Source: Octopus sinensis (lineage: Eukaryota). Taken from it: a DNA stretch of 64,000 nucleotides. The notes under the pieces were generated by a model. That model ran no database searches, was not told where the DNA came from, and was given only the letters and a program-made list of their open reading frames with translations. The position numbers and the translations under genes are program-made. The DNA is taken from positions 144,460,001-144,524,000 of the forward strand of contig NC_042998.1 of the NCBI RefSeq assembly GCF_006345805.1. Reading direction: 5' to 3'. Within the stretch, counting starts at the first letter, position 1. Each line of letters begins with the position of its first letter. This document shows, in pieces, positions 2,839 to 51,480 of the stretch.

Positions 2839-4787
2839 CAGGGTTATTCAAAAAGAAAGAGCAGATTTTAAATTTATTTTTAAAACAAATGGTAAGAGAC
2901 ACAAGCATATCATCATCATCGGTTAACGTCCGCTTTCCATGCTAGCATGGGTTGGACGATTTGACTGGGGACTAGCGAACCAGATGGCTGCGCCAGGCTC
3001 CAATCTGATCTGTCAGAGTTTCTACAGCTGGATGCCCATCCTAACGCCAACCATCTGAGAGTGTAGTGGGTGCTTTTAACATGCCACCAGCACGAGGGCC
3101 AGTCTTGGCAACGGCCACGCTCGAAAATGGTGTTTTGTTCACGTGCCACCGACAGAAGTGCCAGTGAGGTGACGCTGACAATGATCACGCTCAAATGGTG
3201 CTCTTTACGAGCCAGACAGCTGCTCTGGCAGTGATCTCTCTTGGGATGGAGCTGTTAGTGCTCTACTGGCCAGTCATCGAATTTGGTTCAATTTCGATTT
3301 CACTTTCCTCAACAGGTCTTCGCAAGCAGAGTTTTGTGTCCAAAGAAGGAAAGGTATGCATAAGTGGGCTGGCTACATCCTGGTAAAGGCCATAGGCTAT
3401 GGTCTCACTTGTCCTGCTGGGTCTTCTCATGCACAGCATATTTCCAAAGATCTCGGTCACTAGTCATTGCCTCGGTGAGGCCTAATGTTCGAAGGTCATG
3501 CTTCACCACCTTGTCCCAGGTTTACCTGGGTCGACCTCTTCCACAGGTTCCCTCAAGTGCCAGGGTGTGGCACTTTTTCACACAGCTATCTTCATCCATT
3601 CTTGCCACATAACCATACAAGCACAGTCGTCTCTCTTGCATACCACAACTGATGCTTCTTAGGTCCACTCAAGGAACTTACACTCTGTCGAGTATGTACA
3701 CTGACATTACTCATCCATCGGAGCATACTGGCTTCATTCCTTGCGAGCTTACGCATATCCTCAGCAGTCACGGCCCATGTTTCACTGCCATGTAGCATGG
3801 CTGTTTGCACACATGCATCATACAGTCTGCCTTTTACTCTGAGCAAGAACCCTTTGTCACCAGCAGAGTTAAGAGCTCTCTGAACTTTGCCCAGGCTATT
3901 CTTATTCTAGCAGTTACGCTTTCAGCACACCCGCCCCCACTACTGACTTGGTCACCTAGGTAACGGAAGCTATCAACTACTTCTAGTTTTTCCCCCTGGA
4001 ATGTGGTGGAAGTTGTTCTCTGCACATTTTCACTGTTTATTGCTCCTGAGCATCTGCCACATACAAAAACTATCTTCCCAGTTAGCCTTCCTTTGATATT
4101 GCTGCACCTGTTATGTGTCCATAGCTTACACTGGGTACATCTTATAGAGTTTCTACCTACGCCTTTTCTGCAGATCAAGCAGAGTCATCTACCTGAAGGG
4201 GTTTGTGGTTTGTCTACCTTCCTACTTATGAGGATTTTGGTTTTAGATTTTAATCCTTGCTTCAACACCTGAAGCTTCTCCTCTAGTTCTGATAGTGACT
4301 CAGCAATTAGAGCAAGGTCATCACGTTCTACATATTTCTTGGTAGGGGAAGGTTTAAAGTTTATTTTAAGGTAGTATGCATTCAACATGAGCACCATGTG
4401 TTGCTCGATAAACATCAAAACATCGAAACCCTTTTCTGTGAAATTTTTATGCCTTTCATAAATTTGCTTGTGATGAGGTGGATTTTTATTGAATTGGCGG
4501 TGAAATTCACTTTGCACTTGCACAATTGATTCGCATTTCTCAAACTGCAGCACGCAAAAAGACTTTTCTTGTGGCGTTGCCATTTTCTAAGGGATTACAC
4601 AAATGAAAACTATACAACTTTAAATAAAATGAACAAAATGAAACATTAAAGCAAAATTAAAATATTATTTTATTCAATTGATCGTGTTAAACCTTCCCCT
4701 ATCAAGAAATATGTAGAATGTGTTTGTCTCTTACCGTTTGTTTTAAAAATAAATCTGAAACCTGCTCTTTCTTTTTGAATAACCCTG
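2839..4787 (-). mobile_element. Tc1/mariner internal-deletion derivative with about 100-bp TIRs; left TIR split by the RTE insertion
   Basis: TA-flanked CAGGGTTATTCAAAAAGAAAGAGCAG...; the left TIR resumes at about 4324 (gttctacatatttcttggtagggg). Transposase N-terminal HTH MATPQEKSFCVLQF... is fused to the C-terminal DVYRATHGAHVE motif. Confidence 0.9.
2907..4323 (-). mobile_element. 5'-truncated RTE LINE (same family group as 50850-54564), degraded
   Basis: Homologous RT C-terminal peptides (ORFs 3592-3846, 3834-4178) with stops; truncated at the (YA)DD motif; (GAT)n tail at 2907. Confidence 0.92.
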
Positions 4788-7284: not shown

Positions 7285-8261
7285 GAATAGCCAGATGCAA
7301 AATAATGAAGCTCAACCAAATCTGCCATCAAAGAATATGTCTGTTTCTCAACCTGCTGGTAATCAGGCTGCAGTTCCAGCTGAAACTGGCCAAAATGCAG
7401 GAGCAGCTGGAGGTAATACTATTTTAGGTATGAATTCTGCAAACAATGTTAATCAGGGTACCAATAACAAGGAAGTAATTGCTGCTCCCAACTCTAATGA
7501 TAATAAAGCAGGTGGGGTTGAAAATCAAGCAGCTGGTGCTCCTCCTATTAATAAAGATGTTGCTGGTGGAAATCCAGGAGCTGCTGTTCCTCCTACCAAT
7601 AACAATGTTGTTAGTGGAAATCCAGGAGCTGTTGTCCTTCCTGCCGATAATGCAGTTGGTGGAAATCCAGGAGCTGGTGCTCTTCCTGCCAATAACGATG
7701 TTCCTGCTGGAAACCCAGGAGCTGTTGTCCCTCCTGTTAATAATGATATTGCTGGTGAAAATCCAGGAGCTGGTGTTCCTCCTGCCAATAACGATGTTGC
7801 TGGTGGAAATCAAGGAGCTGTTGTCCCTCCTGCCATCAATAATGATGGTGGTGCTCCAGTCAATCAAGATGTTGGCGCTGGAGATCCAAAAATTATTCTG
7901 CCACAGAACAATGATGCTGCTATAGGAAATCTGGGACCTGTTGTTCCTCTTCTCAATAATAATAATGAAGGTGGTGATGGTGTTGGTAACGGTCTAGATG
8001 GTGTTATTGGTATGGCTGAAAAGTTGAAAGAACAGGACGTTGCTGGCGGCAAGCTCACTCCTACAGAACCCTCCCATATCAATGGCATGCCTGCTGGAGC
8101 TGCATTTAATGACAATTTTATTATCAACCAACCTAAAATAGAATCTAAGGAACCTAAAACTGGTTTATTGGACATACTTAAAAATAACAATATTTTATTT
8201 GAAAACCAATACAAAACTGCTCCGAGCATCAACAATCCTAATCTACTTGCTGCACAGGATG
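7285..8261 (+). CDS. Large internal coding exon (977 nt) of an unidentified host gene; Asn/Gly/Pro/Ala/Val-rich low-complexity segment with 15-16 aa repeats
   Basis: Long polypyrimidine tract ending cactag at 7284; open frame through ORF 7295-8272; donor GAT G|gtaagt at 8261/8262. Starts in phase 2 and ends in phase 1; the N-terminal exons lie outside the window. Confidence 0.88.
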
Positions 8262-9043
8262 GTAAGTTTTGATTTTGTATTTTTCAGTGTATTTTTTTTT
8301 TTTTTATATTTTCACTTAAACTTCCTTTTTAATGGAAAAAACTTTTCAAACTGTTTATATCTTCATTGATTTTTAATTTCACAAGACATTTCAATCAATT
8401 TATTTAAGGCTCTCCTGTTGGTGCTTCTATCAGATTTTATTTTAGTGCTTTACATCTATTTATCCATGTTACAATACTTGCAAATTTTGAAATTTGTATT
8501 TTTTCACACTGTTGGAGCAAGTGTTTCTAGGTGATTAGCCTTCCTACTGCTAATGACACAACTCTAAAATGAGTGGAACTTTTCAGTCATGTAGGCGAAA
8601 GGAGATAATCTGATTGATATATGTTCTTTGTTTAGGAACAAACACATTGCAATGATAGCAATGCATCCATTGCAGCTCACTGAACATCTAGCTTTAGTTT
8701 CAGTCTCCCCATAAGTCCAAATGCGATGCCTTTTTTGGCACGTCTTGGGTGATGATAATATTGTTAGTAGTTATTCATATCCTTTCAATATCTGATGCTT
8801 TTTTTTTTAATCCGTAACTGAAATGTAATGAGGCACTTGTTGATTATACAATGTATGCACTTCATCTTCATCATCATTGCTTTAATGTCCATTAGATTGG
8901 ATGAAATTCATTGAGACTGATTTTCTCTAGCCAAATGCTCTTCTAGTCACTAATCTTTATCTGTTTCCAAGCAAGGTAATATTTCTTCTAGCTTTTCAAA
9001 TGCAAAAAGCTCACTAGCTAGACATGTTTTCGGAGTAGATTGC

Positions 9044-9319
9044 TGTGGTGTGGTGATGAGGGAGTGTGACAGAGAGGGAGGGAGCGGAAGTGGGTCTTGC
9101 CGGTCTCGCAGGGCGCATGCGCCGGCGGAAGCGGAAGCGAGAGACAGAACGCACGTGCGGCATCGACCAGGGCGGTCAGACTCGAGAACGACGCCAAGAC
9201 GACAAGACGCTAGCAAGTTGGCTCAAGGCGAATCCGGCTTCATCTCTGCAGGTAAGACCAAATTACACTTCTAATTCTTTTCCTTGTTCTGTTACGCTCC
9301 TTTCACCACACTTATCACA
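9044..9319 (+). repeat. 5' LTR
   Basis: Direct repeat of 12936-13211; differences c/a at 9100 region (ttgccggt vs ttgcaggt) and c/t (gaacgc vs gaatgc). Confidence 0.97.
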
Positions 9320-9331
9320 AGCTATTTCGGC
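9320..9331 (+). promoter_or_regulatory. Non-canonical primer-binding site complementary to the 5' 12 nt of tRNA-Phe(GAA)
   Basis: AGCTATTTCGGC directly follows the LTR; its reverse complement GCCGAAATAGCT equals nt 1-12 of animal (human/Drosophila-type) cytosolic tRNA-Phe, recalled from knowledge. Confidence 0.8.
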
Positions 9332-9372
9332 AAAATAATCACTCGGTTTCGTAAAAATAAAAAATAAAAATT

Positions 9373-10112
9373 ATGCAGACTGCTATGATTTCACGCGACC
9401 CTATAACACCGTTTTGCGGCGACACCGACGTGGTCGCTTGGTTGAGGAGGGTGAAGTTGGTGGCGAAGCTACACGGCATAGCTGACCTGGCTAGTTTTAT
9501 GCCGTTGTATTTGGATGGCCTGGCGTTGGCGTTATATCTGGAGATGGAGGAGACGGACCAACGCAGCGCGGAGAAGGTGGAGATCCGACTTATGGAGGCC
9601 TTCGCGGAAGGAATGTTCGAAGCGTACACTCGACTGGGTAGGATGAGGTGGACGTGTTCGCCGGCGAGCTTAGAAGGTTGGCAAAACTTGCGGGATATGA
9701 GGGAGAGTCGCTAGAACGCACGGTCAGGTTAGCGTTCGTGACCGGCTTTCCCGACATCATGTCGGTCGAGCTACAGAAGCTCCCGAACGTGCGTTCGATG
9801 CCGATGGCCGAGATTATATCGCGGGCACGTGTACTGGTGTCGTGCAGCAGGTTGACGTCGGTAGCAGCGACGGCAACGTCGAAAAGTGGCCCAGCTAGGA
9901 GCAACGGAGAGGGGCTGGGGAAAGAACGCGTGCGATCGTTTAAGGGACAGTGTTTCCGGTGCCAGGGCCCACACATGGTCCGTGACTGCGCGTCGCCCAA
10001 GCCCGAGGTGATTTGCTACCGGTGTCGAGAGCCGGGGCATGTGGCCAGCGAGTGTCTGCGGGGAAACGGACCGCGGGAGACTACTGCGCCGGTAGTTGTC
10101 CCTTTGGATTAG
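9373..10112 (+). pseudogene. gag: Retrotransposon gag with two zinc knuckles; frameshifted near 9650
   Basis: ORF 9373-9714 switches to ORF 9648-10112 at aggtggacgtgttc; knuckles CFRCQGPHMVRDC and CYRCREPGHVASEC. Confidence 0.85.
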
Positions 10113-10121
10113 TAGCGGCGC
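10061..10121 (+). promoter_or_regulatory. -1 programmed ribosomal frameshift signal (G GGA AAC plus H-type pseudoknot)
   Basis: Heptamer in the gag frame with pol in the -1 frame; 7-nt spacer; stem 1 GGGAGACTAC/GTAGTTGTCCC; stem 2 GCGCCG (10086-10091)/CGGCGC (10116-10121). Confidence 0.85.
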
Positions 10122-12899
10122 GTTTCTCATCGTTACCTGTGGTCGACATTCTGGTGAAGGGGAAGATGTCGCGAGCCCTGGTGGACACGGGCTGTACAAC
10201 GACCCTGATGACCACAGAAGTGGCAGAGACGTGGAGTGGAGGAAGCAGTGTCAGGGCAGTCGACGGAAGAGAAGTGCACTGCGAAGGGGTTACGGATGCG
10301 CAGATTGTGGTGCAGGGACTGCAGCTGACGTTGCGAGCGATTGTGGTCGGTCACTTGGTGGACGAGATCGACGTGGTGATGGGGATGGATGCGATCACCC
10401 GTCTGGGAGGTGTTACCGTCAACGAGGCTGGCGTAACGTTTGGGCTAGCAGGGAAGCCGTGTAGGGCGAGACCACGCACCGACGACAACCGTGAGAAATG
10501 GATGCGGCGCACACCATTGAAGACCAGGATTTTCGGGCTGTCTTTGATGGCGAGAGGTGGACAGTGGAGTGGCACTGGAAGGGAGAGCCCCCGATGTTAA
10601 AGAACAAAGTGGGCTGCTATCAGCATACTCTAAAAGGAGATGCCAGAAGTGAGTTCGAGGGGGAGGTGGAGCGGTGGATTAAGGAGGGCATACTGATCCC
10701 CTGGGAAAAAGAAGAGAGCGGAGTCCTGCCACTGATGGCGGTGATACAGCCCACAAAGCGTAAGGTCAGGCCAGTGCTCGACTTCCGAGAGCTGAATGAC
10801 CACGTGTCGTGTCATACAGGCGGCGAGGCCACGGATGTCTGCGGAGACACCTTGCGAGAGTGGAGGCAGACGGCGGGGGCCTCCACGATTGTCGATTTAA
10901 AGTCGGCATACCTTCAGGTTCATGTGGCTGAGAAACTATGGAGGTACCAGCTCGTCAGGTATAGAGGCCGGACGTACTGTCTGACCAGGTTGGGATTCGG
11001 GCTGAATTCAGCTCCGAAGATTATGGCAACAATTCTCAAGGCCGTCCTGGGGAAGGTGGACAGAGTAAAAAGGGCCACCAATTCATACATCGACGACATT
11101 CTGGTGGATGAAACCGTGATACCAGCAACGGAGGTCATAGGCCACCTGAAGAGTTTTGGACTGATCGCCAAGCCGCCAGAGGCTATGGAGGGAGGTGCTG
11201 CACTGGGCCTCAAGCTATGGAGAGACAAAGCTGGCGCCTTGGTGTTCCGGCGAGGGAATGAGATCCCTGAACTGGGCACCGGACAGCATGCAGCTTCATC
11301 AAGAGACGAGCCGAAGGAGTGAAGTGGAATGATAAAGTGGGGGAGAGGACGATCGACATGATGCAGGAAGTCCTGGTCAGAGTAAGAGCAGAGGACCCGG
11401 TGAGGGGCAGCTGGTACGTTCCCAAATCAAAGAGCGGGATCGTATGGTGTGACGCCAGTAGCATCGCAATAGGGGTTGTCTTGGAAGTGGGAGGTGTCAC
11501 GGTGGAAGATGCAGCCTGGCTCAGGAAGATGGATGACTGCAGTCACATCAACGTGGCGGAGTTGGAAGCCGTGCTGAAGGGGGTGAACCTAGCCTTGAAG
11601 TGGGGGTTGCACACCATAGAAATCAGGACTGATTCAGCCACTGTACTTGGTTGGGCGACGGCAGTCATCACCGATGAGCGGAGGGTGCGGACCAAAGGGG
11701 CTGCAGAGATGCTGGTAAAGCGTCGATTGGGGATACTGCGTGAACTGACCATTGAGTTCAATCTGAAGCTGAGCGTGATCTTTGTGCCTTCCGAGAAGAA
11801 CAGGGCAGACGTCCTGACCAGGGTTAAGCGAGCCTGGTTGCAAGTGCCAGAGGATGCGAAGCAGGATGTAGCTGCAGTATGCCATCTGAGCGACTCGGAG
11901 TTGCGGAGACTGCACACCATGCATCACATGGGTGTGGACAGGACGTTGTTCCTGGCCAGAAAAGTCGACTCCGACGTAACAAGACAGAGCGTGCGGAGAG
12001 TGGTTAGCAGTTGTGACAGGTGCCAGTCCATCGACCCTGCTTCGGTCGTGCATGAAGCGGGAAGTATTCCAGTGGACCAGGACTGGAGACGACTGGCGGT
12101 GGACATAACACACTACCGGCAGGGGACATACCTCTCAATGGTTGACTGCGGACCGGGGCGGTTCGCCATATGGAGGGAGATGAGGTCAGGAACCGCAGAA
12201 GAAATTGCGAAAGTGCTGAACGAGATATTCCTGGAACGAGGCCCCGTGGATGAACTGCTTCTGGACAACGGCACTGCATTTCGCTCGGAGGCGCTGAGAG
12301 AAATGCTTGATGAGTGGAAGGTCAACCGCTTCTTCAGGGCGGCATACCGGCCAAGTGGAAACGGGGTGGTGGAAAGGCATCATCGTACCATCAAGGCCAT
12401 GGCAGAGAGGGGTCACATTTCACCAGTCGAGGCCGTGTTTTGGTACAACATGTCGCCCAGATCAGGACAGGCCGAGGAGTCGGTGCCATACAGGGCAATA
12501 TTCAGGTACGAGTGGAGGCATCCGTGTACTACATCAATGCGACCCGGGGCAGAGGAAGAGCACGCCTTCGTGCAGGTCGGGGAGGAAGTCTGGGTGAAAC
12601 CCCCGAACGCACGGTGTACATCGCAATGGGGAAAGGGGACAATAACCTCCGTAAATTCAAAGAATAACATCTCGGTAGATGGTATGCCACGCCACGTTTT
12701 GGACATACGGAGGATTGTCCATGCCCCGGAGGATGGGACAAGCAACAGTGGGCAAGACGATAACAACAGACAGGATGACGAGGTCGGCAGCAACACGCCA
12801 GAAATAAGTCCTAGGGTCGTACTGCGACCACAGAGGGAGCGGCACCCTCCTCCCTGGTTGGCTGACTACGAAACCAGTTTCAGGTGCGGGAGCGAGTGA
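10061..12899 (+). pseudogene. pol: Retrotransposon pol (protease-RT-RNase H-integrase), broken by two lesions
   Basis: Protease LVDTG; RT VLDFRELN, DLKSAY, YIDD; RNase H WCDAS, AELEA, TDS; integrase HHCC plus D..D(35)E (LAVD, LLDNG, VVE). Frame changes at about 10460-10497 and about 11280. Confidence 0.92.
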
Positions 12900-12935
12900 G
12901 GAAGCCGGTTCAGTGATCTATAGATCAGGGGGGCG

Positions 12936-13211
12936 TGTGGTGTGGTGATGAGGGAGTGTGACAGAGAGGGAGGGAGCGGAAGTGGGTCTTGCAGGTCTCG
13001 CAGGGCGCATGCGCCGGCGGAAGCGGAAGCGAGAGACAGAATGCACGTGCGGCATCGACCAGGGCGGTCAGACTCGAGAACGACGCCAAGACGACAAGAC
13101 GCTAGCAAGTTGGCTCAAGGCGAATCCGGCTTCATCTCTGCAGGTAAGACCAAATTACACTTCTAATTCTTTTCCTTGTTCTGTTACGCTCCTTTCACCA
13201 CACTTATCACA
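12936..13211 (+). repeat. 3' LTR
   Basis: Direct repeat of 9044-9319, preceded by a polypurine tract and followed by the TSD ATTGC. Confidence 0.97.
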
Positions 13212-14949
13212 ATTGCAAACTAGGCAGTGTTTTGTATGAATGGTAACTTTACTTACACTCAGTGCGCAAAATGTCAAATCAAGGGAGTAGTTCAGCAGTT
13301 TGCTTTCAAGCCATGTATTCCCAGGTTCAATCCCACTGTACAACATCTTGAGCAAGTGTCTTCTACTGTTGCCCAGGCCAATAAAGGCCTTATGTGTGAA
13401 TTTGATAGACAAAAGCTGAAAGAAACCTGTTGTGTTTGTGCCTGTGCATGTCTGTGTCCCTTTCTTTTGACACTAAGTGATGGTTGTAAACACAAACATT
13501 ACTACTGTCATATAAGTGATGTTATTCGTTTCCATTCGTCTGTGAAAAACGTGCCTTGTTTTGTAAAATACCACCTTGCTTAGAAACAGGTGAAGGTTGG
13601 TAGCAGGAAGGGCATCCAACCACAAAATCTGCTTCAACAAATTCCATCTGACCCATGCAAGCATGGAAAAGTGGATGTTAAATGATGATGATGATGATAG
13701 ACACACACACGCATGCACACACACACATACACGCACAATTACATAATGGAGTTTGTTTTAGTTTCTCTATATCAAATCCACTCACAAGGTTTTGTTTGGC
13801 TTTTGTAGGAGATACTTTTCTAAAGTACTGCACAGTGGGACTGAATCTAAAACCATGTGGTTGGGAATCAAACATTGTAACCACACAGTTAAGCTTACGC
13901 CTACAGACAACAATGAGCTATACTTCTTCTTGGCATCTATTTTTATTGCAATGGGCTGTGTGACAGACAAACTCAAATGCTTTTACCATACACAATGTAT
14001 AACAAAACGTGAATCAGTTAAACCAACCCTTGAACTATCAACTGTTGGCTTTTTACTATGTGCTGTTACTTGCACAGTTGTGACTGTTGTTATGCTTTGT
14101 GCATGTTGACTCCACTGCTACTGGTTCCATGAAAGATGCACCTGGTGCATACTGTAAAATGGTTGGCTTTCAGGAGGGCACCAAGTTGTAGAAAACATGC
14201 TAAAGCAAACATTGGAGCCTGATACAGTCATCCAGCCCATGCCAGCATGGAATATAGATATTAAAAGATGATGATTGTGGGTGAAGAAATGAGCCATAGC
14301 AAAGAACAAATAGAACTATATCTTTTTCAATTTTTGTTTGGCTTGAACTGTTTGGAATATGGCTATTCTTGAGCATCACAACATTAGGGATATAAACAGT
14401 CTTTGAAGTTTTTCACATTATTTAATTTATTTTTATTTTGTTTTATTTTATTTTGGAATTCATTTATAAAAATAAGGTTATTTTTCCTAGATTTTATATA
14501 TTTTTCTTACATATTTTTCTCTCTCACACACACACATATATGTATCTATGTATGTTTTTATTTTGGCATGATTTGGAATCTTTTCATACTTATATTTACT
14601 GCTGGTTTATATATTTTACATAATATTTATTGTATGTTAATTTAGTATCTCAAAATTGCAAGGAGTTCACAGGGTCCATAGCTTAATTGTGGCTATCTAT
14701 AGCATGAAATGACTATGAGAGTAAATTTACTCTTGACCCAGGTTCAAGTCAATCATAAATAATCATTCCCAGAAGTTCTAGCATCTATTTTCTGGAACTT
14801 GAAGAATTAGAGAAGGTAGAAATAAAGAGTCCTACCCAAAGACTGCAAAATACTCATAGAGATTTCTGAACTGGAAATTGGTTCAGTACTTTATACATTT
14901 TCCTATTATATTACGTACAGCTGTAGAAACCATGCTGAAGCTGACTTGG

Positions 14950-15938: not shown

Positions 15939-15972
<34 letters not shown>

Positions 15973-16200
15973 CATCATCATCATCGTTTAGCATCCGCTT
16001 TCCATGCTAGCATGGGTTGGACGGTTCAACTGGGGTCTGGGAAGTCAGAAGGCTGCACCAGGCCCAGTCTGATCTAGCAATGCTTCTACGGCTGGATGCC
16101 CTTCCTGAGTGTAGTGGGTGACTTTTACATGCCAGACGAGGCTGGCAAACGGCCACGATCGGATGGTGCCATTTATGTGCCACCAGTACGGTGTGCCACA
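15973..16200 (-). repeat. Short (GAT)n-tailed repeat sharing the RTE 3' end (truncated RTE or RTE-dependent SINE)
   Basis: catcat...tccgctttccatgctagcatgggttggacgg matches the end of the 50850 element; similar pieces recur more than 15 times in the window (e.g. 6480, 13590, 23680, 34120, 47130, 56190, 58010). Confidence 0.8.
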
Positions 16201-18342: not shown

Positions 18343-19510
18343 GCATTGAGCTGGTAGAAACATTAGCATGTTGGACAAAATGCTTAGTGGCATTTCTTCC
18401 AGCTTATATTCTGAGTTCAAATTCTGCCATGGTCAACTTTGCTAGCCTTCCTTTTCGGGTCGATTAAAATAAGTGCCAGTTAAGCACTGACGTTGATGTA
18501 AATGACTACCTCCTTCCTCAAAATCTCATTCTTTGTGTCTATAGTAGAAAGAATTATTATTTTTATGACTGTTACATGCTACAGCAGGGATGCTGTGTTC
18601 GAGTTTGGTGTTAACTAGTTTCCTTAAATCTCAAGAAGCCTTAGAATTCTTGCAGAATGCAGGATTGTACTTTCCTGAAGGTTGACAATGCAAATCTCAA
18701 TTCCAGTACCCTTCAACCTCTTATGTAGCAGTTTGGGTTTTTTGCGTCAGGTGCATCAATTATTGCAGGAATACTTGTCTTAGTCTTCCACAATCTCTTT
18801 ATATCTCTAGCTAGGTCCTGATATTTCTTAATTTTTTTTTTCAGTTTCATTGATATCCAGTCTGTTATCTTAAGGAATTGCAAAGTCTGTGAGCTTACAC
18901 TTTATTATTATTATTAAGGTGGCAAGCTGGCAGAACCATTAGCACACTGGGCAAAATACTTAGCGGCATTTCGTCTGTCCTTATATTATTAGTTCAAATT
19001 CTGCTATGGTCAACTTTGCCTTTCATCCTTTTCAGGTCGATAAAATAATGTAATCGACTATCTCCCTCTCCCAAATTTTAAGCCTTGTGTCTATAGTAGA
19101 AAGGATTATTATTATTAAGGTGGTGAGCTAGCAGAATCATTAGTACACTGGACAAAATGCTTAGTAGCATTTCGTTCTTCTTTGTATTCTGAGTTCAAAT
19201 TCTGCTGAGGTCAACTTTGCCTTTCATCCTTTTGGGGTTGATAAAATAAGTACTAGTTGATCACTGGGATCAATGTAATCAACTTACTCCACTCCCCAAA
19301 ATTGCTGGCATTGTGCCAAAATTTGAAACTATTATTACTATTAATATTATTGTGGTGAGCTGGAAAATGGTTAGTACAGCCCAAGTTCAGTTCCAGCAAG
19401 ATCCTCTTTGCCTTTCATCCTTTTGGAGTCAGTAAACAGTTAGTCAAGCAGTTGACCAACTCCTTCTCTTAAAATTTCAGGTCTTGTGCCTATAGTAGAA
19501 AGAATTATTT
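18343..19510 (+). mobile_element. Cluster of four head-to-tail family 1 SINEs separated by (TTA)n tails
   Basis: Heads at about 18343, 18917, 19118 and 19351, each preceded by ttattatt tracts. Confidence 0.82.
18575..18903 (-). mobile_element. Second R4/Dong-like 3' fragment, degraded
   Basis: Minus strand TDFAIP*DNRLDINETEKKIKKYQDLARDIKRLWKTK; abuts a (TAA)n tract. Confidence 0.72.
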
Positions 19511-20127
19511 TTTTCTCTCCAGAAGGTACCATTTGTCATGGATGCCTGAATACATAGGACATGCAAAGGCTGGAGAAGAATGGAGCTGGTATGCTTTGCT
19601 GGATGTGCAATGTCAGTGTGCATTTGCAACAGAGCATTGGTGCATTGAGAAAGAAATTGGACATAAGAAGAATTAAATGGAGTGATTTATTTTTGTAGTT
19701 GTTAATAGTTTTCTCAAAGATCTGGTCAAGTCTGTAGACTGCCAGGCTCAATGCATTACTGCAAATGATTCAATATTTCATCATTTTAGTTAAAAACCTG
19801 CCGGGATCTACTTTACCTTTCACTACTTTCATAATCATCAGATGTTCATTTTCCATACTTTCATGGGCTGGACAGTTCAAAAGTAGCTAGTGAGCCAGAG
19901 GATTACACCAAAATCTAGTGTTTGTCTTAGTTTCTTTGGCTGGATGCCCTTCCTTAGGCCAACCACTTTACAGATTGTATTGGGTGCCTTTTATGTGAAA
20001 CCAGCACTAGTGAGATTACCAAGTAGTTCATGGGACACGACCTCAACTGAGTGGAGAGTAGCATTGGGAGAGGTAGATTTGTGTTAGATGTCGAGAGATT
20101 AAAGTATGATAGAAGTGTCTTACTTTA

Positions 20128-20362
20128 AGGCGGGGCGAGCTGGCAGAGTCGTTAGCACGCCGGGCAAAATGCTTAGCGACATTTCGTCTGCCGTTACGTT
20201 CTGAGTTCAAATTCCGCCGAGGTCGACTTTGCCTTTCATCCTTTCGGGGTCGATAAATTAAGTACCAGTTACGCACTGGGGTCGATGTAATCGACTTAAC
20301 CCCTTTGTCTGTCCTTGTTTGTCCCCTCTGTGTTTAGCCCCTTGTGGGCAGTAAAAGAAATA
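20128..20362 (+). mobile_element. Young tRNA-derived SINE (family 1, Nin/Deu-like core) with 17-bp TSD
   Basis: A-box/B-box-like head (gagttcaaattcc), core ttcatcctttcggggtcgataaattaagtaccag; TSD agaagtgtcttacttta at 20111-20127 and 20363-20379. Other copies at about 5281-5493(-), 5535-5740(-), 48640-48850(+), 55855-56070(+), 61290-61410(-). Confidence 0.9.
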
Positions 20363-32730: not shown

Positions 32731-33544
32731 AAAATTTTATTACTTAACTCTACTCCTCTATATCATTACCTTCAACTAACTTTTTTAGCCACATCCCCCT
32801 ACCTCACATCATGGACATTTTTCTCCCCCTCTTTTTCCCTCCATCTTTTTTCTCTCACCCTCTTTTTCTTTCTCCCTCTTGTTCTCTCTTTCCCTTCAAC
32901 TAATCATGTGAAAGCATTACAATTACATACCCTCTACCTCACATCATGGGTGTTTCTCTCTCCCTCTTTTTCTCTCATTCTTTGCCATTCTCTTCAACTA
33001 ATCACATGAAAGCATTACGGACAGGCTAAGTAACATATGAAGAAGCAGAATTATTATAAGATGACTGGAATCTTTGAATAAGAATATCATTAAAAGTTGA
33101 AAGCTTCTTGAACCAACTTGCATGCTAGTACACAACCTCTGTAGGAGACATCATTCATGCCAACTTATACAACCATGGATTGATGCAATAAAATACATAC
33201 CCAAGCCACAACAGTTTTTCAGGTCAATTTCATTCAATACTTATGGCAGCCAGACTGTAAGTTGTAGCCAATTCATTACTTAATGCTGTCAGCCCTTCAA
33301 CCATCCACCACTTTGAGATGAACTAGCAACTACCATGTTGTGCCTGCTCAGTTAATCCCATTTAAGCTTGTATCATAGAACCAAGGATGATTCCAGGGAG
33401 GCTGGTGTTGAAAAAAAGTTAATTTCTTTCCAAAGATTTTTAACCAATATATTTTCATGAAATCACACACTGTTTTTATATTTCATGAAGCAAATGTGAG
33501 AATAATAATTTTTTTATATATATTATATTTTTTTCACTTTTTAG

Positions 33545-33838
33545 GTGTAAATGCACTTAAGAGCCTCAAGGAAGGTTTTGATAATATGACAGGATCAAGT
33601 ATAAACATAACTAAACCTGGGGTTCAGACTCCCAGTCAGCTGAGTAATAACACAGCATTTAGCATTAAAGCGTCAAATGCAGTATTGACGAGTCCAGTAT
33701 CTTCATCAGACAAGGGTTATTCTCTTTTGGCTGTCAAAAGTAATAAAACAGACAGCTCTGACCCAGGACCAGGATCTCCCCAAATGAAGTCATTCAATAA
33801 CTCCAATCTCATCAAATATTTGCAAACTAATTCCTCGG
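33545..33838 (+). CDS. Internal coding exon B1 (294 nt, phase 1-1), Ser/Thr/Asn-rich with six N-glycosylation sequons
   Basis: Acceptor tttttcactttttag|GT, donor TCG G|gtgagt. Joins in frame to the 7285-8261 exon (G|GT = Gly). Peptide VNALKSLKEGFDNMTGSSINITKPG...YLQTNSS. Confidence 0.85.
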
Positions 33839-34517
33839 GTGAGTCTGTGTAATATTGTTCTCTGACAGAATCCAAGCAATGTTTTGTCTCTCTCCATTTT
33901 TATCTTTCTCTCTGAGTCTCTCTTTTTCTCCCTTCGTCTCCAACAGGGGTATATCCTTGTATCTCTTTTACAGCAAGGCACCTATCTCTAACACTATGTT
34001 ATTCTTTTGAACTGCCATCAGCTAGCTCAAAGCCATCTTCCTCTATACTACTACTACTACCCTTCTCAGTCCATAGGACTTCGCTTTTATTTTGCAAGTT
34101 GCTTGGTGACCTTGCTCAAGCTGGTGTCATGAAAAAAAGCACGTTGTACACTCTGTAATGTGGTTGATGTTAAGAAAAGCATCTAACCATAGACACCATG
34201 CCAAAATAGACAATTGAGCTTTGCACAGTCCTCTGCTTGCCAGCTCTCCTCAAACCATTCAACCCATGCGAACATGGAAAATGGACATTAAATGATGGTG
34301 ATGATGATATATATATTCTTTTACTTGTTTCAGTCATTTGATTGTGGCCATAGTAGAGAACCACCATCAGGGTTTTAGTTTAAAAAATTGACCTCAGGAC
34401 TTATTTCTTAAGCCTAGTACTTATTCTATCAGTCTCTTTTGCTGAACCACTAATTCATGGAGGTGTAAACAAACCAACACTTGTTGCCAAGCAGTGATGG
34501 GGAGCCAAACACAAAGA

Positions 34518-37685: not shown

Positions 37686-38126
37686 TACTGTTCTTGTTAA
37701 CATATTTCTAGTGAAATACACCTACCTTTGTTTCAATTGATTTTGAAAATATTGAAGAAAAATAACTTTGTTACAATTAACCTTTAAGCATTCAGGTTAC
37801 TCTGTCAAATGTAATGCTTCTTTATTCACATTGTTTTGAATTAATCATGCATTATCTTGTGGCTTCAAGATTTTGATGACATGATTAATTTTTTAGAATG
37901 ATGTAAGGTAGGTGTGAAAGGCTAGATCTGGTTGGTTTCAACATAAAACAGGTAGAATATTTGGGCTGGATATGGCCTGTTTAAATGTTTCATGGTTAAG
38001 CTATTGTTGAGAACAGAAATTAATGTAAAATTTTGATGGAAGATTTCAATTTAGATCATGTTAAATATGAAGCTTGTATCATAGAACCAGGGATGGTCCC
38101 AAGGAGGATGGTATCAAAAGAATTAA
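37686..38126. mobile_element. piggyBac-type MITE family B containing a nested family A copy (37781-37995) at a duplicated TTAA
   Basis: The B halves match the uninterrupted B copy at about 58669-58889; the insert is flanked by TTAA at 37777-37780 and 37996-37999. Confidence 0.75.
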
Positions 38127-38246
38127 TTTCTTCCCAAAGATTTTTAACCAATATATTTTCATGAAATCACACGCTATTTTTATATTTCCTGAAGCAAATG
38201 TGAGAATAATAATTTTTTTTTATATTGTATTTATTTCACTTTTTAG

Positions 38247-38537
38247 GTGTAAATGCACTTAAGAGCCTCAAGGAAGGTTTTGATAGTATGACAGGATCAA
38301 GTATAAACATAACTAAACCTGGGGTTCAGACTCCCAGTCAGCTGAGTAATAACACAGCATTTAGCATTAAAGCGTCAAATGCAGTATTGAGTCCAGTATC
38401 TTCATCAGACAAGGGTTATTCTCTTTTGGCTGTCAAAAGTAATAAAACAGACAGCTCTGACCCAGGACCAGGATCTCCCCAAATGAAGTCAATCAATAAC
38501 TCCAATCTCATCAAATATTTGCAAACTAATTCCTCGG
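38247..38537 (+). CDS. Internal coding exon B2 (291 nt, phase 1-1), tandem duplicate of B1
   Basis: Same acceptor and donor as B1; differs from it only by N>S, F>I and one 3-nt deletion (LTS>LS); frame intact. Confidence 0.82.
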
Positions 38538-41500
38538 GTGAGTCTGTGTAATATTGTTGTTCTCTGACAGAATCTAAATAATGCTACACACGCAGACAGA
38601 CAGACAGACAGACAGACACACACACACACACACACACACACACCACACACACACACACAACTAGATAAATTTATTCTTCTGCAAGAGTATTCCTTGTCAA
38701 CACTTAGCCATCAACCTCTCTATACATGTTTGTAAGTTCAGTTCCCATGTTTTGAGTATTACTTTCTTTACTCACTTCCTGGACAACCAAGTGGGATTCT
38801 AAGATGTGAGGACCTAGATTAAGTAGCAGCAAATATTGCCCTGAATGGCACTATCACTGTAAAACTTTACGTATGATTTGCCAAACAAGCTACAACATAT
38901 ATATTGGTGACACAATATAATGCCTGTATGTGTATGTCTGTTTGTGTAAGTGGACAGAGCATGGCCAAATAGTTAAGAATTTTGGCTTGTTATTACAAGG
39001 GCCTAAGTTCAATTCTACTCTAGACCACATTGGACAAATGCCTCCTACCATTACCATAGGTTGCCCTAAGCCTCGTGAGTGGCATTGGGTAGATGGAAAT
39101 TTTCTGGAAGACTGTTGGCTGGATTATATCTCTAAATTTAAAGTCATCCTGTTTTTATGTTGTAAAGTTTCAACTTGATTCAGCCAGAAGCTACAGATCT
39201 GTGATATAGCTGAGTACATCACAGACCTGCTTAATCAAGCATTTAAATGCTCACAACCAATACTAATTTGTGTGTGTGTGTGTGAGAGAGAGAGAGAATT
39301 TCCAACCTTGAGAGACACAGGCATGGCTTTATAGTTGAGAATCTTGCTTCCCAATTACATGGTTTCAGATTCAGTATCAGTGTTTCACTTTGGGCAAGTG
39401 TCTTCCACTATAGCCCTGGGTCAACCAAAGTCTTGAGAGTGTATTTGGTAGAAAGAAACTGTTAGAAGCTAGTCAAATATATGTGTGCACAAAGCATGTG
39501 TGTGCGTGTGTTTATATACATTTTGTAAATGTATGCCTGTGTGTCTTCATATATAGTACATAGATTTTACATGTACATTCACTTTAACAACTGTTGACTG
39601 GAACACACAGTGTTGGTCCATTGTGTGTACATATATGACACATCTACATGTTTATATACACACACACACACACACACACACTCACATGTGTATCTTTTGG
39701 ACTTGTACGTGTCTAGTGACTGGGTCTGAAACCATGTATTAAAACTGAAGCAGCTATTTCCTGGGAGAACCATTTTAATAACACAAAACAATTAAATTCA
39801 CTTTAAATTGTATTTCATGATGTGTACAAATTTTTGTCACTCAGCTGTGGCCTAATTAATCACTTATGTAACTTTAAAGCCAATTAAAATATGTTTTTGT
39901 GTGTGTGTTTTCTGTCTGTTATTACTTATATTGCTATACTACCAATTTATATAATCTACCTAGCTACCTATGTATGTATGTATGCATGTATGGATGGACG
40001 GGTGCATGCATGCGTGTGTGCATAGTTCAGGGTTTGTATAATTGTATATAGATAAATATGTTAGGTAATCAAATTTCAACACAGTCCACTTTTCACATTT
40101 TATTTTATATTTTTGCAAGTACTTTCATGTTTTAAAACAATCTTCAGGTAATTGTTTATCTGATGGCATCAACAACTTATGTGCTTTACAACTGAGAATT
40201 ATCAGTTGTGAAGCACCTAAGTTGTTGATGCCATTAGATACACATTTACCTGAAAGATATACAATTACATGAAAGCACTTGTAAAAATATAAAAATAAAA
40301 TGTGAAAATTGGACTGTGTTGAAATTTTATTGCTGTACATGTACACACACACAGACATATACAACCACATGCACACACACATCCATCCATAGTTCACCTT
40401 TATATATATATATATATAAGTGAAATGTTGTTGTGCTTGTGAAAATTAATATGTATACTTCACTGCAACTTTGCTATATATCTATTAAATATTTTATGTA
40501 AGTTTGTGTGTATGTATTATCAGTATTGTGTTGCATTCACTTTGCATGGTTTCCAATAGAGTCCATAAACTGCTTGATGCATGCAGCATGAGATGGTGAA
40601 TGCCTTTTATTCATGTTCTTTTCTTTTTTTTTAATTGTTATTGCTAAGATTTTCGTTTTATTTTAGTTTTGTTCATTTGTTTCATTCTAATGTTTAACTG
40701 ATCAGTCTTTCTAATTTCAGCTCGATAAAAGTTTCCATAACAAAAAAAAAATTTCTGTTGAGTGCAAAACTTTTTATATAATGAGATGGGAAAATCAAAT
40801 TACCAGCATATTACCTCACCACTTTCACAGAAAATCTAGGTTGTTACTTGTACTGTATTTGAACTATGGAAACTATGAAAACTACACACAGACACACACA
40901 AAAATGTCTTCAAAAATAAACTTTTGAAAATGAAAGTCTGCTTTCAAAATACTGGGGCACCATTGCACCATTGCTATTGGTTGAAGCCTTACTGTATGTG
41001 AATCAAGTATACTGGGTTCTGTGCATATACTTTGGGACCCAGAAACCAAGTTAGCTTGTTTTTCTTAAAATTATTCATAATTCACATGACAGTACACATA
41101 TTGTATTTTTATTGGCTAATAAAAAGAGGATGTAAGGACTGATTTGCATATGATTAGTGTGTTATGTCACCAAAACTTTTATCAGCAAGGAGAGGGTTAA
41201 TAACTGTTAGATAGCCTGTGTATTGTATTAGCTCTATATATAGTACTATATATATAGTACGGTATGTAGAGGTTGTATACTATAATAGCTTAACATATAC
41301 ATAGCAGGATACATAAAGGTTGTGCTACTATATTAAATCTACATATGATTTATACTTCTATGTGTATGTAATGCTTGTATATGTTATCTAAATCAAGACA
41401 TCAAAGTTACTGCAAAGAGTTGTTTTAATATTTGTGCCATTCCTGAGAGCACTAACATGCTTAGCCAAGGTATTAAAACTGGTCATTAAATCTAGATTGC

Positions 41501-50083: not shown

Positions 50084-51030
50084 CTGACACATAGAGAAAA
50101 AAAAAGTTTTTTAAATAACGTATTTGAGTGTGTGTGTGTGTGTACATATATATATAGGTATATATATATATTGAGTGTGGAAGGATATATCATCCAGGCA
50201 GTTGACATATATATATCAGTTAAGTTCCAGTTAACAGCAAACCATAACGATCAGTATCTAACGTCTGTGACCACATTTAGTTGTTAGTCACTCGGTGAAT
50301 TCTTCTGATGAATAATTCTATGTTCTCTTTACTGGACAGTAAAAATTGTCTGGCGTGTACTCTTTATTATTATTAATTGTATATATATTGCTGAGGTATT
50401 TTGAAACTAATAACCTGGTGTAGAACTCAATATACTTATGCTTCAGAACGAAGCATTAGTCAAGTACAGACATTTAATAAGAAAATGAGACAAAGGAATA
50501 AACAATTACGAATTTCATTAGCTTACTGACCAATCATGTGTAATAACAAGAGAAGTAAATCTCTGTAGCATTAAACAGGATTTTATTCAATTTATATATA
50601 TATATATGTGCACACACACACACACAGGCATATATCTGTGGTGTTAAATTATTGGCCTGTTGCCCATGTAATCAAAGTCTGACAATTACTACAGCACAAA
50701 GGCTGTGCTCCTCCTGAGGAAGAAGCATTTCATGTTGCAGTTCCAGTCTGCTTTACTGACAGAAGATTAGTTTCACTCTTACTTGGACTGGAGAGAAGGG
50801 AGCATCCTACTATAATAATACTGGCTACAATAAAAATAACAAACATGGACATCATCATCATCATCATCATCATCATTTAACGTCCGCTTTCCATGCTAGC
50901 ATGGGTTGGACGGTTCAACTGGGGTCTGGGGAGCCCGAAGGCTGCACCAGGCCAGTCAGATCTGGGAGTGTTTCTACAGCTGGATGCCCTTCCTAACGCC
51001 AACCACTCCGAGAGTGTAGTGGGTGATTTT

Positions 51031-51300: not shown

Positions 51301-51480
51301 ACAAAGATACAAATTTCATTGATGTTCATCTATTTTGATTTTGTTTGATTTTTTGATTTGATTTGATTTTGATTTTTGATTTTCACTTGCCTCAACAGGT
51401 CTTCACAAGTGTCACAAGAAGGAAGGTATGCACAGGTGGACTGACTACGTCCCAGGTAGGGGCCACGGGTTATGGCCTGA

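What the first reader, a model, noticed from the sequence alone, without database searches (positions are those of the whole stretch)
9320..9331. LTR retrotransposon PBS matches the 5' END of tRNA-Phe, not a tRNA 3' CCA end: possible priming by a short 5' tRNA fragment
Seen: directly after the 5' LTR (...ATCACA, 9319) comes AGCTATTTCGGC, with no TGG. Known: conventional PBSs begin TGG and pair with the tRNA 3' CCA; copia/Ty5-type elements use a tRNA half cut near the anticodon; Tf1 self-primes with an 11-nt piece cut by its own RT/RNase H. The reverse complement here, GCCGAAATAGCT, is nt 1-12 of animal tRNA-Phe(GAA) (GCCGAAATAGCTCAG...). The polarity is right for priming: tRNA nt 12 would pair next to the LTR end, and pairing stops there (nt 13 C faces A). 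My rough chance estimate for a 12/12 match to any tRNA 5' terminus is about 50/4^12. Inference: the element opens the acceptor stem and a roughly 12-nt 5' fragment, made by a host nuclease or by the element's RNase H in Tf1 fashion, primes minus-strand synthesis. I cannot exclude that this is already recorded for this lineage in Repbase/Dfam.
Basis: partly seen in the sequence, partly recalled or inferred. Interest (0 to 1): 0.92.

Follow-up and report, generated by a model that had tools for sequence, protein, structure and literature searches.

The report
Primer site pairs tRNA-Phe 5' end
A small retrovirus-like jumping gene in this octopus-like genome, and its whole family in molluscs, crustaceans and environmental samples, has a DNA-copying start site that pairs with the first 12 letters of the host's phenylalanine tRNA instead of the usual tail end. 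I found no published description of this way of starting reverse transcription.

Summary
A 4.17-kb LTR element lies at 9044-13211. It has 276-nt TG..CA LTRs that differ at 2 of 276 positions, and a 5-bp target duplication, ATTGC. AGCTATTTCGGC follows directly after the 5' LTR. This is the exact reverse complement of nt 1-12 of animal tRNA-Phe(GAA). There is no TGG.

The feature holds across the lineage. In 39 related elements the LTR ends ..ACA and is followed by AGCTAT-NNN-GGC. Conservation is near-total over these 12 nt and falls to background at nt 13.

Only the positions opposite acceptor-stem nt 4-6 vary. The four main variants are exact complements of nt 1-12 of real eukaryote-type tRNA-Phe(GAA) genes: GCCGAAA, GCCUAGA, GCCGCGA and GCCGUGA. 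PBS type follows the host (molluscs and a barnacle versus malacostracans), not the element tree.

Tf1-type self-priming is excluded, because no complement of the PBS lies in the LTRs.

Best reading: a 12-nt 5'-terminal piece of host tRNA-Phe primes minus-strand synthesis. The cut after nt 12 is inferred, probably made by the element's RNase H as in Tf1. The tRNA-Phe of the named hosts and the primer itself were not seen directly.

The window copy is coding-defective. I found no prior report.

The parts
9039..9043 (+). 5' copy of the target-site duplication ATTGC
   Evidence: Identical pentamer at both flanks.
9044..9319 (+). 5' LTR, 276 nt, TGTGG...ATCACA
   Evidence: Direct repeat D11. It differs from the 3' LTR at 2 positions, 9101 and 9150.
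9320..9331 (+). Primer-binding site AGCTATTTCGGC, the complement of tRNA-Phe(GAA) nt 1-12
   Evidence: The 12-nt block is conserved in 39 related elements, with a sharp fall in conservation at nt 13.
9373..10112 (+). gag with a CCHC zinc knuckle, broken by a frameshift near 9642-9654
   Evidence: Pfam zf-CCHC hit. tblastn against a relative's gag switches frame there.
10238..10441 (+). pol: aspartic protease region (frame 2)
   Evidence: Pfam gag-asp_proteas/RVP hits. tblastn to P0010 residues 9-76.
10495..11274 (+). pol: reverse transcriptase plus DUF7047 region (frame 1), out of frame with the protease and RNase H parts
   Evidence: Weak RVT_1 hit. 65% identity to Argonauta P0006 residues 57-317. 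DUF7047 lies between RT and RNase H in relatives.
11280..12899 (+). pol: RNase H (RVT_3/RNase_H type) and integrase (zinc-binding domain plus rve core), one open frame of 526 aa
   Evidence: Pfam hits. Acidic RNase H residues D45/E81/D105/D164, integrase H199/H203/C232/C235 and D262/D316/E352 are invariant across 14 relatives; I assign these columns to the active sites by their motif pattern. The closest solved integrases are those of MMTV, HIV and HTLV.
12914..12927 (+). Palindrome TGATCTATAGATCA, conserved across the lineage, just upstream of the polypurine tract
   Evidence: TGATCTnnAGATCA or close variants in nearly all of 39 distinct relative sequences. Those sequences were collected with a pattern that itself requires this motif.
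12927..12935 (+). Polypurine tract AGGGGGG plus 2-nt spacer CG before the 3' LTR
12936..13211 (+). 3' LTR
13212..13216 (+). 3' copy of the target-site duplication ATTGC

Best explanation
The 12 nt after the 5' LTR are the primer-binding site of a compact, retrovirus-like gag-pol LTR retroelement. Instead of the 3' CCA end, they pair with the first 12 nt of host tRNA-Phe(GAA): the acceptor-stem 5' strand, U8, A9 and three D-stem bases. Proposed steps follow.

1. The gag zinc-knuckle protein anneals tRNA-Phe nt 1-12 to the PBS. The complementarity is shown; the annealing is inferred.
2. The tRNA is cut between U12 and C13, where the duplex ends against the LTR's terminal CA. This gives a 12-nt RNA with a 3'-OH. 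I favour the element's own RNase H as the nuclease, as in Tf1. This step is inferred.
3. Reverse transcriptase extends the fragment into U5-R (inferred).
4. After plus-strand priming at the G-rich polypurine tract, plus-strand strong-stop synthesis runs off the 5' end of the 12-nt primer. This would explain why the PBS is always exactly 12 nt and ends at tRNA nt 1. If the primer is copied as in retroviruses, it would also explain why the PBS takes the sequence of the local host's tRNA-Phe (inferred).
5. Integration makes 5-bp duplications (shown).

The copy in this window is a recent but frameshifted, non-autonomous insertion.
For: - **Position and sequence.** PBS position, absence of TGG and the 12/12 complement.
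- **Conservation.** 36 loci (33 distinct sequences) plus 3 more all read ..ACA|AGCTAT-NNN-GGC. Information is 2 bits at nine of the 12 positions and 1.6-1.8 bits at two more, low only at positions 7-9 (0.6-1.1 bits), and falls to 0.67 and then 0.2 bit from nt 13 on.
- **Outside the LTR.** The 12-mer is absent after the 3' LTRs, which are followed by 5-bp duplications. It is therefore not an integrase site.
- **Limited pairing.** Complementarity to tRNA-Phe is confined to nt 1-12 in 9 of 10 Phe-type elements, and to nt 3-12 in the one-mismatch copy L027. No recurrent second contact was found.
- **Variants match real tRNA-Phe genes.** TTCG, CGCG and CACG match eukaryote-type tRNA-Phe(GAA) genes starting GCCGAAATAGCT, GCCGCGATAGCT and GCCGTGATAGCT. 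CTAG matches a eukaryote-type tRNA-Phe starting GCCTAGATAGCT (L092) and seven phage tRNA-Phe genes. The other tRNA species on the same contigs, excluding two anticodon-mutated Phe-like genes, match at most 9 of 12.
- **Same pattern of variation.** Eukaryote-type tRNA-Phe keeps nt 8-65 almost invariant while the acceptor stem varies. The PBS family shows the same pattern of constant and variable positions.
- **Host tracking.** PBS type follows the host, not the element tree. The octopus, Argonauta, Aplysia and Amphibalanus elements are TTCG; three Oratosquilla elements and one Portunus element are CTAG. Yet the Oratosquilla pol is 62% identical to the octopus copy, while other TTCG elements are only 40-49% identical.
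- **Enzymes conserved.** The columns I read as RNase H catalytic residues and the gag CCHC knuckle are conserved.
- **Precedents.** Tf1 RNase H cuts between nt 11 and 12 of an 11-bp RNA duplex at its PBS (PMC7175516). HIV and MLV copy the primer into the PBS (PMC7472051).
- **Stability.** The 12-bp duplexes have predicted energies of -19 to -23.5 kcal/mol.
Against: - No tRNA-Phe gene of octopus, Oratosquilla, Portunus, Aplysia or Amphibalanus was seen. The matching tRNA-Phe genes come from unidentified eukaryotic contigs, a viral bin and phages.
- No primer, strong-stop cDNA or small-RNA data exist.
- A cut inside the D stem that leaves a 3'-OH at nt 12 is not a known tRNA processing event. 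Known 5' tRNA fragments are longer (own knowledge).
- Three minor PBS types found no eukaryote-type tRNA-Phe partner in my scans: CCCG, CCGG and CACGCG. CCGG equals animal tRNA-Lys(UUU) nt 1-12 from memory.
- Ty1 and Ty3 do not copy the primer into the PBS (PMC7472051). Host tracking could therefore need selection rather than copying.
- If tRNA-Phe of most bilaterians is GCCGAAA, then the CTAG type in malacostracans requires a lineage-specific tRNA-Phe change that I have not verified.
Confidence: 0.65

Rival explanations
1. Same primer, different nuclease. A host enzyme makes a short 5' tRNA-Phe fragment before packaging, and the particle takes up the ready-made 12-mer. This resembles the way copia-type elements are thought to use a ready-made tRNA-iMet 5' fragment.
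For: All the sequence evidence for tRNA-Phe nt 1-12 applies equally. 5' tRNA fragments are abundant in animal cells and copia-type elements use a 5' tRNA fragment (own knowledge). PMC5445492 cites PBSs complementary to internal tRNA regions.
Against: Known 5' fragments are 14 nt or longer, and many carry a cyclic phosphate that cannot prime (own knowledge). A fixed end exactly where the duplex meets the LTR's CA is more simply explained by a cut measured on the annealed duplex, as in Tf1 (PMC7175516).
Confidence: 0.2
2. The partner is another host small RNA, not tRNA-Phe, that ends or begins with GCC-NNN-AUAGCU. Examples would be another tRNA species in some hosts, or a tRNA-derived SINE or other Pol III transcript.
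For: Host tRNA sets were not examined. The CCGG type equals tRNA-Lys(UUU) nt 1-12 (memory). CCCG and CACGCG found no Phe partner.
Against: Four types, covering 34 of 39 elements, are exact complements of real tRNA-Phe(GAA) 5' ends. The other tRNA species on the same contigs, excluding two anticodon-mutated Phe-like genes, reach at most 9 of 12. The constant part is the tRNA U8-A9-D-stem motif.
Confidence: 0.08
3. The conserved 12-mer is not the primer site but another cis signal, for packaging, dimerisation or translation start (gag ATG lies 0-10 nt downstream in many relatives). Priming happens elsewhere or otherwise.
For: The gag start codon often follows within a few nt. No biochemical data exist.
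Against: It sits exactly where every LTR retroelement has its PBS, and no alternative PBS is present (no TGG; no self-complement). A packaging or translation signal would not be expected to be the exact complement of a tRNA's terminal 12 nt, or to change in step with tRNA-Phe acceptor-stem variants.
Confidence: 0.05
4. Tf1/sushi-type self-priming: the first bases of the element's own transcript fold back on the PBS.
For: The primer-site length (12 versus 11 nt) and the absence of TGG resemble Tf1.
Against: The reverse complement of the PBS is absent from the window at up to 1 mismatch. In 9 elements the best match in their own LTR is 6-8 of 12, no better than shuffles. The same 12-mer is shared by elements with unrelated LTRs.
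Confidence: 0.01

Closest known systems
Tf1/sushi group self-priming (S. pombe Tf1, Tf2; Ty3/gypsy superfamily)
   Same: A short PBS without TGG directly after the LTR. The primer is an 11-nt RNA released by an RNase H cut at the end of an RNA:RNA duplex on the PBS (PMC7175516). The 12-nt length and a cut exactly at the duplex end are what the present model needs.
   Different: In Tf1 the primer is the 5' end of the element's own mRNA. Here no self-complement exists and the partner is the 5' end of a host tRNA, acting in trans. The pol lineage also differs: retrovirus-like integrase and a cellular-type RNase H.
copia / 1731 / Ty5 / Tca2-type priming by a 5' tRNA fragment (Ty1/copia superfamily)
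   Same: The primer is a 5' piece of a tRNA made by an internal cut, not the CCA end (own knowledge: Kikuchi 1986; Ke 1999). PMC5445492 mentions PBSs complementary to internal tRNA regions.
   Different: Those PBSs pair with the anticodon stem-loop region of tRNA-iMet (or Arg, Lys), and the fragment is about 39 nt. Here pairing is with the extreme 5' terminus (nt 1-12) of tRNA-Phe, the fragment would be 12 nt, and the domain order is PR-RT-RH-IN, not PR-IN-RT-RH.
Conventional retroviral / Ty3 / BEL tRNA priming
   Same: A host tRNA is the primer, the PBS abuts U5, and the acceptor stem must be opened. The element has a polypurine tract, TG..CA LTRs and short target duplications.
   Different: The conventional PBS begins TGG and pairs with 8-18 nt of the 3' CCA end. 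Here the opposite strand of the acceptor stem is used and a cut is needed to create the 3'-OH.
Odin retrotransposons / lokiretroviruses (PMC9040795)
   Same: gag-pol only with no env, a retrovirus-like architecture with an added cellular-type RNase H after a linker, and an invertebrate host.
   Different: Odin was reported only from sea anemones after a screen of 1,710 protostome genomes, and its PBS is not discussed. Relationship to the present lineage was not tested. The present elements are very compact (about 4.0-4.4 kb) and occur in molluscs, crustaceans, a sea spider and many metagenomes.

Membership tests
LTR retrotransposon (Ortervirales), generic | Two LTRs ending TG..CA, a short target-site duplication, a polypurine tract before the 3' LTR, and gag plus pol with PR, RT, RNase H and IN | tested here: met
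   The LTRs have 2 mismatches in 276 nt. The duplication is ATTGC. The polypurine tract AGGGGGG is at 12927-12933. The domain order is PR-RT-RH-IN.
Conventional tRNA 3'-end-primed element | PBS begins TGG and is complementary to the 3' terminal nucleotides (including CCA) of a tRNA | tested here: not met
   The post-LTR sequence is AGCTATTTCGGC. None of 39 relatives has TGG at this place.
Tf1/sushi self-priming elements | PBS complementary to the first ~11 nt of the element's own transcript (inside the LTR) | tested here: not met
   The best LTR match is 6-8 of 12, equal to shuffled controls, in 9 elements.
Tf1/sushi self-priming elements | Primer released by the element's RNase H cutting at the end of the PBS duplex | not testable with these tools
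   Needs biochemistry. The columns I read as RNase H catalytic residues are conserved.
copia/Ty5-type tRNA-fragment priming | PBS complementary to the anticodon stem-loop region of initiator tRNA-Met (or another tRNA's internal region) | tested here: not met
   Complementarity is to tRNA-Phe nt 1-12 only; no recurrent match to internal tRNA-Phe regions was found. Initiator tRNA-Met was not compared directly.
copia/Ty5-type tRNA-fragment priming | Ty1/copia pol order PR-IN-RT-RH | tested here: not met
   The order is PR-RT-RH-IN.
5'-terminal tRNA-Phe PBS lineage (proposed here) | 12 nt directly after ..ACA that are the exact complement of nt 1-12 of a tRNA-Phe(GAA) | tested here: met
   Window. 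Thirty-four of 39 related elements match real tRNA-Phe 5' ends.
5'-terminal tRNA-Phe PBS lineage (proposed here) | PBS equals the complement of the resident host's own tRNA-Phe 5' end | not testable with these tools
   No tool gives animal genome tRNA sets. There are no tRNA genes in the window, and only a non-canonical tRNA-like call in the animal loci.
Odin-like retrotransposons | gag-pol without env | tested here: met
   The 3.6-kb internal region is filled by gag and pol. Relatives have two ORFs of about 290 and about 915 aa.
Odin-like retrotransposons | Dual RNase H (degenerate tether plus newly acquired RNase H) | tested here: inconclusive
   The RNase H matches the RVT_3/RNase_H Pfam families, and DUF7047 lies between RT and RNase H. 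No structural test of a tether was made.
Odin-like retrotransposons | RT groups as sister to lokiretroviruses | not tested
A profile search puts the integrase nearest to retroviral integrases and the RT nearest to Ty3, then to HIV-2 and foamy virus.

The most novel reading that the evidence does not exclude
A whole retrovirus-like lineage of protostome LTR elements primes reverse transcription in trans, Tf1-fashion. It anneals the 5' terminus of host tRNA-Phe to a 12-nt PBS, cuts it after nt 12 with its own RNase H and uses the 12-mer as primer. It then re-copies that primer into the PBS at each cycle. The PBS would therefore be a readout of the host's tRNA-Phe acceptor stem, which would allow host assignment of metagenomic retroelements. 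This would be a third way of using a tRNA as primer, after the 3' end and the anticodon-region fragment.
Probability: 0.45. Interest if true: 0.88.

Novelty: new variant of a known kind. Interest (0 to 1): 0.8.

Why it matters
How reverse transcription is primed is a defining trait of retroelement lineages. Only a few solutions are known: the tRNA 3' end, an internal tRNA fragment, self-priming, and hairpin sites. A family-wide PBS for the extreme 5' end of tRNA-Phe adds a new one. It links the tRNA-primed and Tf1-type self-primed mechanisms: a short primer cut at the end of a 12-bp RNA duplex.

It makes concrete, cheap predictions. The host tRNA-Phe 5' end should equal the reverse complement of the PBS, and a 12-nt RNA should be attached to strong-stop DNA.

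It also shows that LTR annotation tools that look for TGG or CCA-end PBSs will miss this lineage. It suggests that 5' tRNA fragments, like the 3' fragments known to target PBSs, could interact with retroelements. The lineage itself (about 4 kb, retrovirus-like integrase, cellular-type RNase H) is widespread in marine and soil metagenomes and may bear on the origin of retroviruses.

Tried and rejected
- **Tf1-like self-priming.** The reverse complement of the PBS is not in the LTRs. Rejected.
- **Extra tRNA-Phe contacts near the PBS**, like Ty1 or Ty3 boxes or the HIV A-loop. None recurs.
- **Second repeat pair at 33412/38116 as a comparison LTR element.** It is a duplicated exon with splice sites, not LTRs.
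- **tRNA genes in the window and in about 50 related loci**, to obtain host tRNA-Phe. None was found except a non-canonical tRNA-like call in L081.
- **Conventional TGG-type PBSs for the variant acceptor stems in the fetched loci.** Nothing useful.
- **Literature string searches for the variant 12-mers.** No tRNA hits.
- **Literature searches for DUF7047 or for any report of a PBS complementary to a tRNA 5' end.** Nothing.
- **IMG/VR scan for the D-arm motif alone.** More specific patterns worked.
- **Protein look-ups.** Three failed because the protein was not on record. The Octopus sinensis relative L224 is a fragment without recognisable LTR or PBS. L041 is internally deleted and L052 too distant.
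- **Two papers** (PMC230564, PMC6520983) are not held.

Full report
**1. What is at the site**

Reading 8700-9600 and 12840-13300 and the repeat scan (family D11) shows two 276-nt direct repeats, 9044-9319 and 12936-13211. They begin TGTGG and end ATCACA and differ at only two positions. They are flanked by a perfect 5-bp duplication, ATTGC, at 9039-9043 and 13212-13216. The duplication fixes the LTR ends to the base.

The 12-mer is unique in the window on both strands even with one mismatch allowed. Its reverse complement GCCGAAATAGCT is the start of human tRNA-Phe(GAA); a published primer reads GCCGAAATAGCTCAGTTGGGAG (PMC10505166). The same start occurs in animal-type tRNA-Phe(GAA) genes found on eukaryotic contigs.

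The polarity fits priming. tRNA nt 12 would pair with the base next to U5, and nt 13-15 (CAG) face the LTR's ACA and cannot pair.

**2. The element**

Between the LTRs lie four coding parts:
- gag with a CCHC knuckle;
- an aspartic protease;
- a weakly scoring RT;
- one 526-aa frame with an RNase H of the RVT_3/RNase_H type and an integrase.

Compared with relatives that have one gag ORF (about 290 aa) and one pol ORF (about 915 aa), the window copy is frameshifted. The shifts are in gag (about 9642-9654) and twice in pol (about 10441-10516 and 11268-11280). It is therefore a young but defective insertion.

A lineage-wide palindrome, TGATCTATAGATCA (12914-12927), and the tract AGGGGGG precede the 3' LTR.

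The integrase profile is nearest to retroviral integrases (MMTV, HIV, HTLV). The RT is nearest to Ty3, then to HIV-2 and foamy virus. A domain of unknown function, DUF7047, lies between RT and RNase H. This architecture recalls the Odin retrotransposons of sea anemones (PMC9040795). I could not test relatedness, and that paper does not mention a PBS.

**3. Relatives**

A protein search with the RNase H-integrase frame found 452 relatives. They come from Argonauta, Octopus sinensis, Aplysia, crabs, a mantis shrimp, a barnacle, an amphipod, a shrimp, a sea spider and many roughly 4-kb metagenome contigs.

I fetched:
- 9 genomic places on named-animal genome assemblies, one of which (L224, Octopus sinensis) proved uninformative, plus one ENA metagenome contig (L002);
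- 78 metagenome loci.

Wherever the 5' region is present, the LTR ends ..ACA and is followed by AGCTAT-NNN-GGC. That holds for 36 loci (33 distinct sequences) plus 3 more.

An information profile over the 33 distinct sequences shows:
- 2 bits at the last two LTR bases and at nine of the 12 PBS positions, and 1.6-1.8 bits at two more;
- 0.6-1.1 bits at PBS positions 7-9;
- a fall to 0.67 and then about 0.2 bit from position 13 onward.

The flanks are unrelated between families. The 12-mer is not part of the LTR: the 3' LTRs are followed by 5-bp duplications instead (window, L001, L019, L081, L083, L084, L086).

**4. The variants**

| PBS | Elements | Reverse complement |
|---|---|---|
| AGCTATTTCGGC | 9, plus one copy with one mismatch | GCCGAAATAGCT |
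| AGCTATCTAGGC | 13 | GCCTAGATAGCT |
| AGCTATCGCGGC | 10 | GCCGCGATAGCT |
| AGCTATCACGGC | 2 | GCCGTGATAGCT |
| AGCTATCCCGGC | 1 | GCCGGGATAGCT |
| AGCTATCCGGGC | 1 | GCCCGGATAGCT |
| AGCTATCACGCG | 2 | CGCGTGATAGCT |

Read as a tRNA 5' end, apart from the two CACGCG copies, the constant part is G1 C2 C3, A7, U8, A9 and G10 C11 U12. The variable part is acceptor-stem nt 4-6.

I asked whether tRNAs with such ends exist:
- A scan of IMG/VR for GCCTAGATAGCTCAGTNGG gave 8 loci. In 7 the match is the start of a tRNA-Phe(GAA). One of these (L092, a 134-kb contig) is of eukaryotic type.
- A scan of the GTDB genome collection for GCCNNNATAGCTCAGTTGGGAGAGCGTNAGACTGAAGATC gave 28 loci. Many are contaminating eukaryotic tRNA clusters. 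ARAGORN was run on nine of these loci and called a tRNA-Phe(GAA) in each; in the other loci the GAA anticodon is fixed by the search pattern itself. The genes begin GCCGAAA, GCCGCGA, GCCGTGA, GCCGGAA, GCCCAAA, GCCCAGA, GCCGCTA or GCCTCGA.

So the four main PBS types, covering 34 of 39 elements, are exact complements of nt 1-12 of real tRNA-Phe(GAA) genes. Among 88 distinct tRNA 5' ends from those contigs, only Phe genes (and two mutated Phe copies) match 12 of 12. Other tRNAs reach at most 9 of 12.

Eukaryote-type tRNA-Phe genes keep nt 8-65 almost unchanged while the acceptor stem varies freely. The PBS family shows the same pattern of constant and variable positions.

**5. Host versus element phylogeny**

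Named hosts sort by PBS type:
- TTCG: octopus window, Argonauta, Aplysia and the barnacle Amphibalanus;
- CTAG: three Oratosquilla elements of two families, and Portunus.

Metagenome samples are almost always uniform in type. On a neighbour-joining tree of the RNase H-integrase region the types are interspersed. The Oratosquilla pol is 62% identical to the octopus copy, whereas other TTCG elements are 40-49% identical.

The PBS thus changes with the host and not with the element clade. This is expected if the partner is a host RNA. It is especially expected if the primer is copied into the PBS at each cycle, as in HIV and MLV but not Ty1 or Ty3 (PMC7472051).

**6. Rivals**

- Tf1-type self-priming is excluded. 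The complement of the PBS is not in the window, and in nine elements the best LTR match is no better than shuffles.
- No second contact with tRNA-Phe recurs near the PBS.
- An integrase-recognition role is excluded by the site's position outside the LTR.
- A packaging or translation signal does not explain exact complementarity to a tRNA terminus, or its co-variation.

**7. Mechanism**

Shown:
- a 12-nt site at the PBS position;
- an exact complement to tRNA-Phe nt 1-12;
- sharp borders at both ends;
- variation that mirrors tRNA-Phe acceptor stems;
- conserved RNase H and zinc knuckle;
- duplex energies of -19 to -23.5 kcal/mol.

Inferred:
- the tRNA is annealed by gag;
- it is cut between nt 12 and 13 to give a 3'-OH. 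I favour the element's RNase H by analogy with Tf1, which cuts between nt 11 and 12 at the end of an 11-bp duplex (PMC7175516). A host nuclease is the alternative;
- the 12-mer primes minus-strand DNA;
- plus-strand strong-stop synthesis runs off the primer's 5' end, which would set the PBS length at exactly 12.

**8. Limits**

- I could not fetch tRNA genes from the named hosts. The tRNA-Phe genes that match the variants come from unidentified eukaryotic contigs, a viral bin and phages.
- Three rare PBS types remain unmatched.
- The paper library lacks most subscription journals and Repbase Reports, so "no prior report" is provisional.

**9. Handling**

I read the element in pieces and printed only its ends. 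I built no consensus. In some searches I wrote BLAST subject files to scratch that held, respectively, the near-whole internal region of the window element (9301-12960) and whole fetched loci that contain complete elements. That went against the operators' note (1), which asks for work piece by piece. Nothing from these files was printed, and I deleted them. The step of repairing or assembling a full-length active copy for a transposition assay is referred.

Noticed in passing
window 12914-12935; same place in L001-L086: A palindrome TGATCTnnAGATCA directly upstream of a G5-7 polypurine tract, then 1-3 nt, then the LTR's TGT. It appears in nearly all of 39 distinct sequences of the lineage, with a few degenerate variants. 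Those sequences were collected with a pattern that itself requires this motif. It may be a hairpin that sets the plus-strand primer cut.
   Followed up: partly
L002, L021, L023, L035, L040 and others, 0-10 nt after the PBS; window 9373: In many relatives the gag ATG follows the PBS almost at once, so the leader is nearly absent. In the window it is 42 nt away. Position 13 after the LTR is A or C in most elements (0.67 bit), which is unexplained.
   Followed up: no
L005, L006, L010, L013, L018, L023, L035: Many roughly 4-kb metagenome contigs of this lineage have identical ends, so they are circular permutations. This comes either from assembly collapse of the two LTRs or from LTR circles or tandem copies.
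   Followed up: no
L228, L235, L243, L244, L231 (GTDB 'bacterial' MAG contigs): Contigs filed under bacterial MAGs carry dense eukaryote-type tRNA gene clusters. Examples are 24 tRNAs in 4.4 kb, a tandem 3.7-kb unit with 7 tRNAs, and a 1.37-Mb contig. These are eukaryotic contamination of the bins.
   Followed up: partly
L081 2595-2667 (-): An ARAGORN 'tRNA-Val(cac)' call lies about 195 nt upstream of the Oratosquilla element's 5' LTR. The sequence is non-canonical, so it may be a tRNA-like SINE or a pseudogene. One case only, so nothing can be said about targeting.
   Followed up: partly
L085 6019-6161 and 7539-7681: The Oratosquilla element carries a nested insertion of about 1.66 kb bounded by 143-nt direct repeats (99% identical). 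It is possibly a miniature LTR element.
   Followed up: no
window 33412-33859 and 38116-38558: A repeat of about 450 nt, 4.7 kb apart (91-99% identity), is a duplicated exon with its splice acceptor and donor (..tttttag|GTGTAAATG...CCTCGG|gtgagt). It is not an LTR pair.
   Followed up: yes
window 3379-4149 and 51452-52231: A repeat of about 770 nt, 48 kb apart, at 85-92% identity (families D10, D12, D14). Its nature was not examined.
   Followed up: no
window 18376-20298, 48677-48760, 55861-56025; 13287-13366, 54920-54999; 2906-2999, 15971-16064, 50860-50953: Several dispersed short repeat families with tRNA-like B-box motifs (GGTTCAAATCC / GTTCAATCCCAC) and a family starting ATCATCATCATCGTTTAGC. 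These are probably host SINEs.
   Followed up: no
window 7502-7907 and 50960-51331: Tandem repeats with periods of 48 nt and 62 nt (families D4 and D5).
   Followed up: no
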